Assembly (NCBI GenBank): GCA_023334545.1
Contig: JAADVB010000094.1
Location: forward strand, 1 to 63,112
Source of the DNA: Salisapilia sapeloensis CBS 127946
Lineage: Eukaryota; Protista; Oomycota
Direction: 5' to 3'
Length of the DNA stretch: 63,112 bases
Shown: piece by piece, positions 19,579 through 22,140 of the stretch
How positions within the stretch are numbered: the stretch's first letter is position 1
Layout: every line of letters starts with the position of its first letter
The notes under the pieces: model-generated
The model's database searches: none
The model's input: the letters and a program-made list of their open reading frames with translations, nothing else
What the model was told of the DNA's origin: nothing
Position numbers and translations under genes: made by a program

Positions 19579-20355
19579 CTACTCGACCGCGACGCATTTG
19601 TTGATCCAACGTCTCCTCCGGACCTTTGCGAGTGAGAATGGATCTTCCATCCACGGTCCAGACAGACTCTCTGCATAGACCCATCCATTATCATCGCCGA
19701 TACTGACATCTAACGTCCATCCATCGCCTTTCATTCCTTCCGGTACCTTTGGTGCCACGTCCATAAATCTATCCGACGAGACTTCTGCGTCCTCGTCTTT
19801 ATTCCAACGCTTTCGTGCACCTTGATTCTCATCTTCGTCAAAGAGACTGCTGTCGTTTGTCCACTTGTGAACGATATGGAATCTCTGGTTTTCATACAAC
19901 TGTAGAACTTGGTCAGCTTTCCCGGCCTGATTGACACAAAGACCAAGGACTATCTGTGGTGACACTTCCTGCTTTCGGAAGGCGTCCGAGATATCGATGT
20001 CATAGCTCCGTTCCTCCATGTCCTTGACACTCCGGTTGTATGTTTTTGGGTCATCCAAAAGAGGTGCTAGCGGAATGAATAGAATGCCAAGAAGATCGTG
20101 AGTCAGTAACTGGTCATGGTCATACACACGTACAGTCAAGACTTTGTCCTGAGGTTGGTCAAGCGTGAAGTTGAAGCTCTCAGGTGGGTCCCACACCGGG
20201 TTCAATTCGTTCTTTTTGCACGAACTCTTTTCAATCGGAGAATTATCAATTCGGAACGTCACGTACGGGTCCGACTTGCCTCCAAAGCCAAAGAAGCTCA
20301 TGTCTGCACGCGGCAGGTCAATCGCCTTAAAAAGCGTGATGTCTAGCGTGTACAT
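19579..20355 (-). CDS. C2 domain + DysF-like domain protein (paralogue A)
   Basis: C2: KAIDLP..GKSDPYV..ELNPVW..VYDHD..DLLG. DysF-like: LYENQR..WTLDVSIGDDNGWVYA..VRRRRW. Confidence 0.85.
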   Translation of the reverse strand: MYTLDITLFKAIDLPRADMSFFGFGGKSDPYVTFRIDNSPIEKSSCKKNELNPVWDPPESFNFTLDQPQDKVLTVRVYDHDQLLTHDLLGILFIPLAPLLDDPKTYNRSVKDMEERSYDIDISDAFRKQEVSPQIVLGLCVNQAGKADQVLQLYENQRFHIVHKWTNDSSLFDEDENQGARKRWNKDEDAEVSSDRFMDVAPKVPEGMKGDGWTLDVSIGDDNGWVYAESLSGPWMEDPFSLAKVRRRRWINKCVAVE

Positions 20356-20362
20356 GGCCACC

Positions 20363-20377
20363 GAAATACAAATGAGC
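20363..20377 (-). promoter_or_regulatory. Oomycete-type Inr/FPR-like core promoter of C2-DysF gene A
   Basis: Minus strand GCTCATTTGTATTTC just upstream of the ATG at 20355, close to the oomycete consensus GCTCATTYBNNNWTTY (spacing off by one). Confidence 0.55.
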
Positions 20378-20733
20378 TAAGAAAGAAAGAAGTCGGAGCT
20401 TGCGATACGATTTTCGTTGTTTGATTTGGTGTCCAGCGCCACGGTTTGATAGGTTAAAATTGCGATTCTTAACCCAGTACACACACATACCATACGGAAC
20501 TACAAATGAAAACGAATGCGACAAAAGGGACTTACACGTCGCTCTTTGTAATCGTAACGTTTCATAAGAGGTACTTGGTCGTCACGATCAACTACAGGAG
20601 CAGGGCAAAAGATCTTGCTCGCTGGAAATGTGCAATGAAGACATGTACCCACGCAACTTTTTACTGCGTTGATCAAGTTTCCATTCATGTCTTTTTACAT
20701 TTGTGTATTACATTTACATGAACCTACCAACAT

Positions 20734-20806
20734 GGGGATGTAGCTCAGATGGTAGAGCGTTCGCTTAGCATGCGAAAGGTACTGGGATCGATACCCAGCT
20801 TCTCCA
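20734..20806 (+). tRNA. tRNA-Ala (anticodon AGC)
   Basis: Cloverleaf: acceptor GGGGATG/CTTCTCC with the G3:U70 alanine identity pair, anticodon arm TTCGC-TTAGCAT-GCGAA, T arm CTGGG-ATCGATA-CCCAG, discriminator A at 20806. Confidence 0.97.
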
Positions 20807-20807
20807 G

Positions 20808-20879
20808 GCGTGTGTAGTATAGTGGTTAGTACCCTTCGTTGTGGTCGAAGTATCCTCGGTTCGAATCCGGGCACGCGCA
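20808..20879 (+). tRNA. tRNA-His (anticodon GTG), with genomic G at position -1 (20807)
   Basis: Acceptor GCGTGTG/CACGCGC, D arm GTAT..GTAC, anticodon arm CTTCG-TTGTGGT-CGAAG, T arm CTCGG-TTCGAAT-CCGGG, discriminator A at 20879. Confidence 0.96.
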
Positions 20880-20883
20880 TTAC

Positions 20884-20888
20884 TTTTT
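20884..20888 (+). terminator. Pol III terminator (T5) shared by the tRNA pair
   Basis: TTTTT begins 5 nt after the tRNA-His discriminator; no T-run lies between the two tRNAs. Confidence 0.8.
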
Positions 20889-21399
20889 GTATGTTTTCAG
20901 CTTTATCCAGAGGAAGTACGTGATGAGCTTCTCATGTCGTACGTTGAATTTTGGAGAATTTCCTTTCTTGCCTAATGATAGCAGTGATTAATACACACTG
21001 ACTGGATTACTAAAAGGTGGGAAGGATTATCATACTGTACTTCTTCAGGCCCGTAGAAGATCTGGTAGAACAACGGTGAAGCTGTCTCTACGATTAAACC
21101 ATCAATAAAGTAGAGCTACATCAATGTTTTTTATCATGTTTCATATTGGTATTGCGCTATGGAAAGAATAATAAAATAAACGCTTTCAAGGAAACTACAC
21201 AAGGGCAAACATACAGAACGAGTTTAAAAAGTCCGCGCATGTCTGTCACTACCGAAGAAAACAAAAGAAAATCGAGATAATACCCCATGAAAATACATTA
21301 TTCAAGTGCTGTCGAATCTACAAGCAGACGTTGGACTGGGTTTGACGACTGGGTTTCGACGCTTCTTTGCCCCATGTGCAGTATTTAAACGTGGATCGA

Positions 21400-22140
21400 T
21401 CAGAAGCTTGTGCCTGCGATCGGCTTACATTTGTTAATCCACTTTCGACGACGAGCCATGGCAAGTGTAAACGGCTGGCTTTGCCATGGACCTGAAAATG
21501 ACGGCGCGTAGACCCATCCATGCTCATCTCCATGCGAAACGTTCAACGTCCACCCCGCAGCTTCCATGTGTGGCGGTACTGGTGGAGCTACCTTTGCAAA
21601 TGAGTTCGAGGTAATATCCGTATTATCGACTTGACTCCATCGCTTGCGATTGCCAGACGCTTCCTTCCACTTGTTGATCAAATCGAACTGCTGGTTTTCC
21701 CATAATTCGAGTATGGCATCCACGCGGTCATTGCATGCGACTTTGATTTCTAAAAACACAACAGCTTTACAGTTTTGTTTGCGGAACGCGTCTGGAACCT
21801 CCAACTCGTACGACAGCTCTTCCACTCTTGTCGTATCGAGAAATATACCCAACGCGATTCCAGTCATCCCGAGCAAGTCGTCACTATTAAAACGATCATG
21901 ATCGTACGCGCTAACATGGAGCACTGCCTCTCGCGGTCGGTCAACCTGAAAGGTAAATGTCGGCGCTGGTTTCCACACTGGGTTCAGCTCATTCGAAACA
22001 ATCTCACTGTACTTGGAAACGCCATTTACTTTAAAGCAAAAGTACGGGTCAGACTTGCCGCCCATGCCCATGAATCCAAAGTCGCTCGCCGGTAGATCAT
22101 TTGCTTTCGTAAGCGTCACTTGCACCGCGTAACCGCTCAT
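21400..22140 (-). CDS. C2 domain + DysF-like domain protein (paralogue B)
   Basis: KANDLP..GGKSDPYF..ELNPVW..AYDHD..DDLLG, then LWENQQF..WTLNVSHGDEHGWVYA..ARRRKW; co-linear with paralogue A. Confidence 0.85.
   Translation of the reverse strand: MSGYAVQVTLTKANDLPASDFGFMGMGGKSDPYFCFKVNGVSKYSEIVSNELNPVWKPAPTFTFQVDRPREAVLHVSAYDHDRFNSDDLLGMTGIALGIFLDTTRVEELSYELEVPDAFRKQNCKAVVFLEIKVACNDRVDAILELWENQQFDLINKWKEASGNRKRWSQVDNTDITSNSFAKVAPPVPPHMEAAGWTLNVSHGDEHGWVYAPSFSGPWQSQPFTLAMARRRKWINKCKPIAGTSF

What the first reader, a model, noticed from the sequence alone, without database searches (positions are those of the whole stretch)
20734..20888. tRNA-Ala/tRNA-His dicistron whose single-G spacer could supply the histidine G-1 identity nucleotide
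Seen: tRNA-Ala(AGC) ends at discriminator A20806, one G (20807) follows, tRNA-His(GTG) G1 starts at 20808, and the only Pol III T-run comes after tRNA-His. Established: HisRS normally needs G-1. Eukaryotic cytosolic tRNA-His usually gets it post-transcriptionally from Thg1 opposite A73, whereas bacteria encode it. tRNase Z cuts right after the discriminator and leaves a 5'-phosphate on the downstream RNA. Known yeast dimeric tRNA genes have spacers of several nucleotides. Inference: tRNase Z processing of tRNA-Ala would release a tRNA-His already carrying pG-1 opposite A73, a route independent of Thg1 and RNase P. I am not aware of this being described for a nuclear tRNA-His gene.
Basis: partly seen in the sequence, partly recalled or inferred. 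Interest (0 to 1): 0.9.

Follow-up and report, generated by a model that had tools for sequence, protein, structure and literature searches.

The report
Ala–His tRNA pair sharing one G
In this oomycete-like genome and many environmental relatives, the histidine tRNA gene always sits exactly one G behind an alanine tRNA gene, so a single cut between them could finish the alanine tRNA and give the histidine tRNA the extra 5' G it needs to be recognised; that would be a route to this identity mark not described for nuclear genes.

Summary
tRNA-Ala(AGC) is at 20734-20806, a single G at 20807, and tRNA-His(GUG) at 20808-20879 with A73. There is no T4 run inside the pair, and a T5 run lies 4 nt after tRNA-His.

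The pair is not a one-off.
- The organism's own DNA run holds the Ala-3'/G/His path as one unbranched contig at about 4.4 times single-copy depth.
- No identical tRNA-His with another upstream context was seen.
- The same Ala-G-His junction occurs in two other coded organisms and in 7 fetched environmental loci.
- It also occurs in 66 spurious ORFs that translate the antisense strand, and all 66 keep the junction codon that requires a G spacer.
- Meanwhile 17 of 42 stem pairs show compensatory changes and the flanks are unalignable.

The spacer G is therefore under selection. The best reading is a co-transcribed Pol III dicistron in which one cut after Ala A73 makes both the Ala 3' end and a pG-1 tRNA-His. 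The enzyme is most likely tRNase Z.

Three things remain untested: whether Thg1 is absent, what the mature 5' end is, and which enzyme cuts.

Encoded G-1 in nuclear genes is already known (C. elegans, Bigelowiella), and ELAC2 makes a downstream tRNA 5' end in human mitochondria. The scan had already noted two more such dicistrons on other pieces of this genome. Verdict: a new variant of known kinds.

The parts
20734..20806 (+). tRNA-Ala(AGC), 73 nt, with G3:U70, discriminator A73 at 20806 and a U6.U67 mismatch in the acceptor stem
   Evidence: Compensatory changes in the anticodon and T stems across 7 sequences.
20807..20807 (+). Single-nucleotide spacer G, the candidate G-1 of tRNA-His, lying opposite A73 (20879)
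   Evidence: Invariant in 8 of 8 DNA sequences. Implied in 66 of 66 antisense ORFs, whose junction codon is Pro = CCN.
20808..20879 (+). tRNA-His(GUG), 72 nt, with G1:C72 and discriminator A73
   Evidence: In the 7 sequences, 5 of 7 acceptor pairs, 4 of 5 anticodon-stem pairs and 3 of 5 T-stem pairs show changes on both sides.
20884..20888 (+). T5 run, the first Pol III terminator-like run after the pair
   Evidence: A run of at least 4 T begins 0-4 nt after His A73 in all 7 aligned loci, and none lies inside any dicistron.

Best explanation
This is a conserved RNA polymerase III dicistron. Transcription starts upstream of tRNA-Ala, runs through both tRNAs and stops at the T-run after tRNA-His. 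One endonucleolytic cut of the bond between Ala A73 (20806) and G20807 leaves a 3'-OH on tRNA-Ala, ready for CCA addition. The same cut leaves a 5'-phosphate on G20807, which stays on tRNA-His as the G-1 identity nucleotide opposite A73. The enzyme most likely to make this cut is tRNase Z acting on tRNA-Ala after RNase P has removed the Ala leader. The resulting 1-nt 'leader' on tRNA-His is a poor RNase P substrate. Shown here: the gene anatomy, copy number, conservation and selection on the G. Inferred: co-transcription, the cut site, the enzyme, and independence from Thg1.
For: (1) Anatomy: 1-nt spacer, no internal T4 run, T5 run 4 nt after tRNA-His.
(2) Own-genome DNA run X1: one unbranched contig covers 20777-20881 at depth 185 against 42 for single-copy flanks, about 4.4 copies. 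The three diverging trailers sum to 198. No branch enters tRNA-His from another upstream context. Ala followed by another base has depth 140. Scan notes report two more dicistrons on other pieces.
(3) The same junction occurs in organism B (123 of 123 nt identical, different trailer) and in organism E, which has a different His anticodon stem. It also occurs in loci L001 and L022-L027.
(4) Across the 7 aligned DNA sequences, 98.3% of cells are paired and 17 of 42 pairs have changes on both sides (0 of 500 shuffles reach this). Slid controls give 1-4 such pairs. The spacer G and both A73 never change.
(5) A profile of the antisense translation found 66 ORFs spanning the junction. All 66 have Pro (CCN, the complement of His G1 plus the spacer G), with 10 different His acceptor variants and 44 distinct sequences.
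(6) Background: other eukaryote-type tRNA-His genes (A73) picked up in contaminant contigs have c, t, a or g at -1 and no abutting tRNA.
(7) Literature: PRORP3 cuts G-1/A73 substrates at the canonical site without miscleavage, and cuts a 1-nt leader 10-fold more slowly (PMC4797305). ELAC2 cleavage at the 3' end of human mitochondrial tRNA-His simultaneously makes the mature 5' end of tRNA-Ser(AGY) (PMC11144196).
(8) A giant-virus-like contig has tRNA-Ile(UAU)-G-tRNA-His(A73), the same design with a different upstream tRNA.
Against: There is no RNA evidence. The organism's own RNA run X3 has no contig across the pair, only a contig over a separate monocistronic Ala locus. The organism B contig from an RNA library runs past the T-runs, so it may be DNA or read-through.

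Whether Thg1 is present could not be checked. The scan notes contain no Thg1 gene note, which proves nothing.

Another scan note (s1-298522) reports a tRNA-His 625 nt behind a tRNA-Ala(CGC) in an AT-rich stretch of this genome. I could not read it. It may be organellar, diverged or a real monocistronic gene.

Spacer lengths that shift the reading frame would escape the ORF-based search. The one DNA pattern scan that allowed spacers from -2 to +11 nt found only a single locus.

tRNase Z is reported to prefer G as the first trailer base (my recollection, not checked). That could conserve the G without it ever serving as G-1.
Confidence: 0.55

Rival explanations
1. The dicistron is real, but the G is not used. 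RNase P cuts between G20807 and G20808, Thg1 then adds G-1 as in other eukaryotes, and the leftover 1-nt trailer on tRNA-Ala is trimmed. The G is conserved only because the processing enzymes prefer it (for example as the first trailer base for tRNase Z), or because so short a spacer tolerates little change.
For: Canonical eukaryotic tRNA-His has A73 and obtains G-1 from Thg1 (PMC4338351). PRORP3 cuts G-1/A73 substrates at the canonical -1/+1 site. Thg1 absence is not shown.
Against: The G is invariant in 8 of 8 DNA sequences and 66 of 66 ORFs, while the flanks and most stem pairs have turned over. That is more than a mild kinetic preference would be expected to hold. An RNase P cut at -1/+1 inside two acceptor helices separated by only 2 unpaired nt is sterically awkward; PRORP needs upstream pairing melted. 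Other eukaryote-type tRNA-His genes show no constraint at -1.
Confidence: 0.22
2. The G is kept as G-1, but RNase P makes the cut at a shifted site (-2/-1), as proposed for C. elegans. tRNase Z plays no special part.
For: C. elegans keeps an encoded G-1 opposite A73 without Thg1, presumably through unusual 5' processing. RNase P and tRNase Z leave the same end chemistry at this bond, so the sequence cannot tell them apart.
Against: The shifted RNase P site is known to need a G-1:C73 pair; here it is A73 in all sequences. This reading does not explain why an upstream tRNA must abut tRNA-His at exactly 1 nt in every lineage, or why a virus uses a different upstream tRNA in the same way.
Confidence: 0.15
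3. The two genes are transcribed separately. The A and B boxes of tRNA-His recruit TFIIIC/TFIIIB onto the Ala gene body, and transcription of tRNA-His starts inside tRNA-Ala. The adjacency is a relic of tandem duplication.
For: tRNA-His has consensus-like internal promoter boxes (TAGTATAGTGG and GGTTCGAATCC, my reading). Oomycete genomes carry many dimeric and trimeric tRNA repeat units (PMC9584435).
Against: A relic would not keep the spacer length and base constant across lineages whose stems have changed at 17 pairs. In known yeast dimeric tRNA genes the downstream gene depends on the upstream promoter (textbook knowledge, not tested here).
Confidence: 0.05

Closest known systems
Genome-encoded G-1 in nuclear tRNA-His genes of Thg1-lacking eukaryotes (C. 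elegans; Bigelowiella natans), Rao and Jackman 2015, PMC4338351
   Same: G at -1 in the gene opposite the eukaryotic A73, present in (nearly) all gene copies. The proposed outcome, G-1 without Thg1, is the same.
   Different: Those genes are described as ordinary genes with a 5' leader, and retention is ascribed to unusual 5' processing. Here the G is the whole spacer to an upstream tRNA, so the upstream tRNA's 3' processing site coincides with the His -2/-1 bond. Thg1 status is unknown here.
Dimeric Pol III tRNA genes of yeasts (S. pombe tRNA-Ser/tRNA-Met-i; S. cerevisiae tRNA-Arg/tRNA-Asp); see PMC4234475 and PMC2566860
   Same: Two tRNA genes on one strand, no terminator between them, one T-run after the second.
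   Different: The yeast spacers are several nucleotides long (about 7 and 10 nt, from my own knowledge) and are discarded. Here the spacer is 1 nt, invariant, and a candidate functional nucleotide of the downstream tRNA.
[quoted passage not shown]
   Same: One RNase Z cut gives the mature 3' end of the upstream tRNA and the mature 5' end of the downstream tRNA, without RNase P.
   Different: That system is organellar, lies within a long polycistronic transcript and needs TRMT10C/SDR5C1, and tRNA-His is the upstream partner. Here the pair is nuclear and Pol III-transcribed, and the cut would create an identity nucleotide.
Bacterial and organellar tRNA-His with encoded G-1:C73, cut by RNase P at -2/-1
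   Same: G-1 is transcribed from the gene and retained.
   Different: That mechanism requires a G-1:C73 base pair. All sequences here have A73.
Nanoarchaeum equitans leaderless tRNA-His (PMC10100707)
   Same: G-1 is obtained without RNase P or Thg1.
   Different: There the G-1 is the transcription start nucleotide. Here it is internal to a transcript.

Membership tests
Eukaryotic dimeric (dicistronic) Pol III tRNA gene | Two tRNA genes on the same strand separated by a short spacer | tested here: met
   1-nt spacer; the same in L001 and L022-L027.
Eukaryotic dimeric (dicistronic) Pol III tRNA gene | No Pol III terminator (T4 or longer) between the genes, and a terminator after the second | tested here: met
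   no internal T4 run in 7 of 7 sequences; a T-run begins 0-4 nt after His A73 in 7 of 7.
Eukaryotic dimeric (dicistronic) Pol III tRNA gene | A single dimeric precursor transcript is made | tested here: inconclusive
   no contig across the pair in the organism's own RNA run X3. The organism B contig from an RNA library spans the junction but also runs past the T-runs. Only assembled contigs were available, not small-RNA reads.
Nuclear tRNA-His with genome-encoded, retained G-1 (C. elegans type) | G at -1 in all or nearly all gene copies | tested here: met
   An unbranched contig at about 4.4 copies in the own DNA run; 8 of 8 DNA sequences and 66 of 66 ORFs elsewhere. One reported extra tRNA-His (s1-298522) was not examined.
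Nuclear tRNA-His with genome-encoded, retained G-1 (C. elegans type) | No Thg1 gene in the genome | not testable with these tools
   Only this window is readable, and no tool-supplied Thg1 query was available. Scan notes hold no Thg1 gene note, which is not evidence of absence.
Nuclear tRNA-His with genome-encoded, retained G-1 (C. elegans type) | Mature tRNA-His carries the encoded G-1 | not testable with these tools
   This needs 5'-end mapping. The single read-laying run showed contigs only.
Bacterial-type encoded G-1 (RNase P cleavage at -2/-1) | G-1 pairs with a C73 discriminator | tested here: not met
   A73 in all 7 aligned sequences and in L027.
tRNase Z-generated 5' end of a downstream tRNA (human mitochondrial His/Ser(AGY) type) | The upstream discriminator is directly followed by the first mature nucleotide of the downstream tRNA | tested here: met
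   A20806 is followed by G20807, which would be the -1 nucleotide of mature tRNA-His.
tRNase Z-generated 5' end of a downstream tRNA (human mitochondrial His/Ser(AGY) type) | tRNase Z, not RNase P, makes the cut | not testable with these tools
   This is an inference, based on PRORP3 cutting G-1/A73 at the canonical site and being 10-fold slower on 1-nt leaders.

The most novel reading that the evidence does not exclude
In a whole lineage of microbial eukaryotes (this oomycete-like organism, its relatives and many unidentified environmental ones), cytosolic tRNA-His is made only from Ala-G-His dicistrons. Its G-1 identity nucleotide is produced by tRNase Z cleavage at the 3' end of tRNA-Ala, and Thg1 has been lost. 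This would be a further natural route to G-1, besides RNase P retention, Thg1 addition and transcription initiation. At least one giant virus may exploit the same design with tRNA-Ile as the upstream partner.
Probability: 0.33. Interest if true: 0.85.

Novelty: new variant of a known kind. Interest (0 to 1): 0.72.

Why it matters
G-1 is the main identity element of tRNA-His, and how cells acquire it has been treated as a domain-level rule with only a few exceptions. A conserved gene design in which a neighbouring tRNA's 3' processing site supplies G-1 would add a mechanism. It would explain how some eukaryotes might do without Thg1, and it would link tRNA gene order to tRNA identity. It also makes predictions that tRNA 5'-end sequencing in a cultivable oomycete could test quickly. 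Oomycetes include major plant and animal pathogens, so a tRNA-His maturation route differing from the host's is also of practical interest as basic biology.

Tried and rejected
- An exact-protein look-up of a window protein found nothing on record.
- Syntenic loci in Globisporangium splendens, Phytophthora ramorum and Lagenidium giganteum keep the NEMP / C2 / C2-DysF / Hsp70-TPR gene order but carry no tRNA. The pair's position is therefore not conserved and could not be compared by synteny.
- The junction pattern with a free spacer (-2 to +11 nt) gave 1 metagenome locus and none in the viral or prokaryote collections.
- Taxonomy of the environmental hits failed. Cluster look-ups and the last word-index search returned only unnamed metagenome ORFs. 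Two longer contigs had no DNA available.
- Thg1 and HisRS could not be searched. I had no tool-supplied query and chose not to type a sequence from memory. Scan notes gave no Thg1 or HisRS note.
- The paper on P. infestans tRNA arrays and its supplements do not list an Ala/His unit.
- A bacterial-type G-1:C73 mechanism is rejected because the discriminator is A73.
- A chance or assembly artefact is rejected because of copy number and recurrence across data sets.

Full report
**Observation.** The window holds exactly two tRNA genes (ARAGORN). The Rfam tRNA model places them at 20734-20806 (57.6 bits) and 20808-20879 (58.1 bits), both full length.

Reading the sequence directly:
- tRNA-Ala(AGC) has the G3:U70 alanine pair and discriminator A20806.
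- G20807 follows as a single nucleotide.
- tRNA-His(GUG) starts at G20808, has a 7-bp acceptor stem ending at C20878, and has discriminator A20879.
- G20807 therefore sits where G-1 would, opposite A73, as in eukaryotic cytosolic tRNA-His.
- No run of four or more T occurs inside 20734-20879, and a T5 run lies at 20884-20888.
- The minimum-energy fold of the 146 nt gives two adjacent acceptor helices separated only by A73 and the G.

**Host.** A D-2-hydroxyglutarate dehydrogenase in the window is 64-71% identical to those of all oomycete groups. A C2-DysF protein next to the tRNA pair is 43-49% identical to proteins of Phytophthora, Globisporangium and Lagenidium. The gene order NEMP / C2 / C2-DysF / Hsp70-TPR, with the EDEM-like mannosidase nearby in P. 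ramorum, is kept in P. ramorum and G. splendens and partly in L. giganteum. The genome is therefore oomycete-like but not close to any sequenced genus in the collections. The syntenic loci carry no tRNA, so the pair is a dispersed element, not a positionally conserved one.

**Copy number in this genome.** Contigs of the organism's own DNA run (X1) were laid on 19900-21700.
- The flanks have depth 42.
- A 73-nt contig that is exactly tRNA-Ala has depth 323, about 7.7 copies.
- One unbranched contig from 20777 to 20881 (Ala 3' part, G, all of tRNA-His) has depth 185, about 4.4 copies.
- Ala followed by a different base has depth 140, about 3.3 copies.
- After 20881 the path splits into trailers of depth 42, 42 and 114, which sum to about the junction depth.

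An assembly graph breaks at branch points, so the unbroken junction contig means no identical tRNA-His with another upstream context was present at detectable depth. Scan notes independently report two further Ala/His dicistrons on other pieces of the genome (s1-296279 and s1-307694).

One note (s1-298522) reports a tRNA-His 625 nt behind a tRNA-Ala(CGC) in an AT-rich stretch. I could not read it. It did not appear among contigs at least 85% identical to this tRNA-His, so it is diverged, organellar or filtered out. It remains an open point.

**Conservation elsewhere.**
- In organism B, a 151-nt contig is identical over 20759-20881 and then has a different trailer.
- In organism E, a 382-nt contig at about 70 times the depth of a 5.6-kb contig of the same run matches the Ala 3' part, the G and the His 5' part. 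It then shows a different His anticodon stem. This fits the tandem tRNA arrays described for oomycetes (PMC9584435).
- A DNA pattern allowing spacers from -2 to +11 nt found one metagenome locus, L001, with a 1-nt G spacer.
- The antisense strand of the dicistron is an open reading frame, so I searched a profile of its 49-aa translation against 1.84 billion representative proteins. There were 981 hits.
- Of those proteins plus a few cluster members, 66 span both halves without a gap.
- In that frame the junction codon is the complement of His G1, the spacer, and Ala A73. All 66 have proline (CCN), which requires G1 = G and spacer = G.
- These 66 carry 10 different His acceptor variants and 44 distinct sequences.
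- The only His-half-only hits among the best 150 were of the animal type.
- DNA fetched for several hits (L022-L027) always shows tRNA-Ala(AGC), one G, then tRNA-His(GUG). This includes a 17-kb long-read contig with four copies spaced about 3.7-4.0 kb apart.

**Selection.** In the ungapped alignment of seven DNA sequences, 98.3% of cells in the two cloverleaves pair. Seventeen of 42 pairs show changes on both sides, which no shuffle reached (0 of 500). Slid controls give 1-4 such pairs. In tRNA-His, five of seven acceptor pairs covary.

The 5' flanks share little beyond 'AT' before Ala G1 in the oomycete-type sequences. The 3' flanks share only the T-run. Against this turnover the spacer G and both A73 are invariant.

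If the spacer were neutral, roughly one lineage in four would keep G. Ten acceptor variants all keeping it is of the order of 1e-5 to 1e-6 under independence. Relatedness weakens that figure but does not remove it.

As a background, eukaryote-type tRNA-His genes (A73) from contaminant contigs in prokaryote assemblies and a giant-virus bin have c, t, a or g at -1. None has an abutting upstream tRNA.

**Mechanism.** The design implies one Pol III transcript. This is inferred, since no terminator lies between the genes and one lies just after tRNA-His.

The bond between A20806 and G20807 is at once the tRNase Z site of tRNA-Ala and the -2/-1 site of tRNA-His. Both tRNase Z and RNase P leave a 3'-OH upstream and a 5'-phosphate downstream (established enzymology). 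One cut there would yield tRNA-Ala ready for CCA addition and pG-1-tRNA-His.

Reasons to favour tRNase Z:
- Shifted RNase P cleavage is known to depend on a G-1:C73 pair. A. thaliana PRORP3 cut a G-1/A73 substrate only at the canonical site, and it cut a 1-nt leader ten times more slowly (PMC4797305).
- Only the tRNase Z reading explains why an upstream tRNA must abut at exactly one nucleotide.
- A scan note says this genome's PRORP has an NLS-like N-terminus (s1-315477). I treat this as an untested lead.

What is not shown: the precursor, the mature 5' end, the enzyme, and the absence of Thg1.

**A second design of the same kind.** Two near-identical IMG/VR contigs carry tRNA-Ile(UAU), one G, tRNA-His(GUG, A73), 39 nt, then tRNA-Asn. 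L021 encodes a TBP-like protein, a Ser/Thr kinase, a deoxynucleoside kinase, a ribonucleotide reductase small subunit and DUF5871. PHROGs hits are limited to the reductase and an HNH endonuclease, so the contig is giant-virus-like. A different upstream tRNA with the same single G suggests the principle is not tied to tRNA-Ala. This rests on effectively one sequence.

**Comparison with what is known.** Four routes to tRNA-His identity are described:
- RNase P retention of an encoded G-1:C73;
- Thg1 addition opposite A73;
- transcription initiation at G-1 in Nanoarchaeum;
- loss of G-1 with a non-canonical HisRS.

In addition, an encoded G-1 opposite A73 occurs in C. elegans, and by gene sequence in Bigelowiella natans, through an unknown nuclease specificity (PMC4338351, PMC6471195, PMC6097661).

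A dicistronic supply of G-1 by an upstream tRNA's 3' processing did not turn up in six full-text searches. The nearest remark is a general one, that 3' processing of an upstream tRNA could hand a substrate to 5' editing in mitochondria (PMC4284800). Absence from that library is not proof of absence from the literature.

**Verdict.** It is multi-copy, possibly the only source of this tRNA-His in the genome, and conserved with an invariant G across many diverged sequences.

| Claim | My estimate |
|---|---|
| The G becomes G-1 | about 0.7 in all (0.55 below plus 0.15 for the RNase P variant) |
| One cut, with tRNase Z the favoured enzyme | 0.55 |
| Whole lineage is Thg1-independent | about 0.33 |

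I class it as a new variant of known kinds, with interest 0.72.

Noticed in passing
L021:13327-13588 (- strand); the same in L020:408-554: A giant-virus-like contig (TBP-like protein, Ser/Thr kinase, dNK, RNR small subunit, DUF5871) carries tRNA-Ile(UAU), a single G, tRNA-His(GUG, A73), 39 nt, then tRNA-Asn. This is the same 'upstream tRNA, one G, tRNA-His' design with a different partner.
   Followed up: partly
window:20734-20931 (- strand): The antisense strand of the dicistron is an open frame of about 77 codons. At least 60 clusters of 'proteins' in public collections (981 profile hits in all) are translations of tRNA-Ala, tRNA-His or both. These are spurious ORFs, but they serve as a handle to find such loci.
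   Followed up: yes
L026:1-15699: A long-read metagenome contig carries four Ala-G-His units spaced about 3.7-4.0 kb apart. In one unit tRNA-Ala is interrupted by an insertion, but the '...CTCCAG|GC' junction is kept. The contig has about 3x coverage, so an assembly error is possible.
   Followed up: partly
window:20739 with 20800: The tRNA-Ala acceptor pair 6:67 is a U.U mismatch in the window and in 5 of 7 aligned sequences. The two most diverged sequences have U:A.
   Followed up: no
window:17244-32178 compared with L002-L005: The gene order NEMP / C2 / C2-DysF / Hsp70-TPR, with an EDEM-like GH47-PA protein nearby, is conserved with Phytophthora ramorum and Globisporangium splendens. Those loci lack the tRNA pair.
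   Followed up: partly
run X10 (organism E), contig laid on window:20778-20833: A 382-nt contig carrying the Ala-G-His junction has depth about 3600, against about 52 for a 5.6-kb contig of the same run. This suggests a high-copy tandem array of the dimer in that organism.
   Followed up: no
run X3 (own RNA), contig laid on window:20734-20806: A 2,027-nt contig from the organism's RNA library contains a separate, monocistronic copy of the same tRNA-Ala. Its trailer begins ATCGAATCTTTTAC. It is either read-through transcription or DNA in the library.
   Followed up: no
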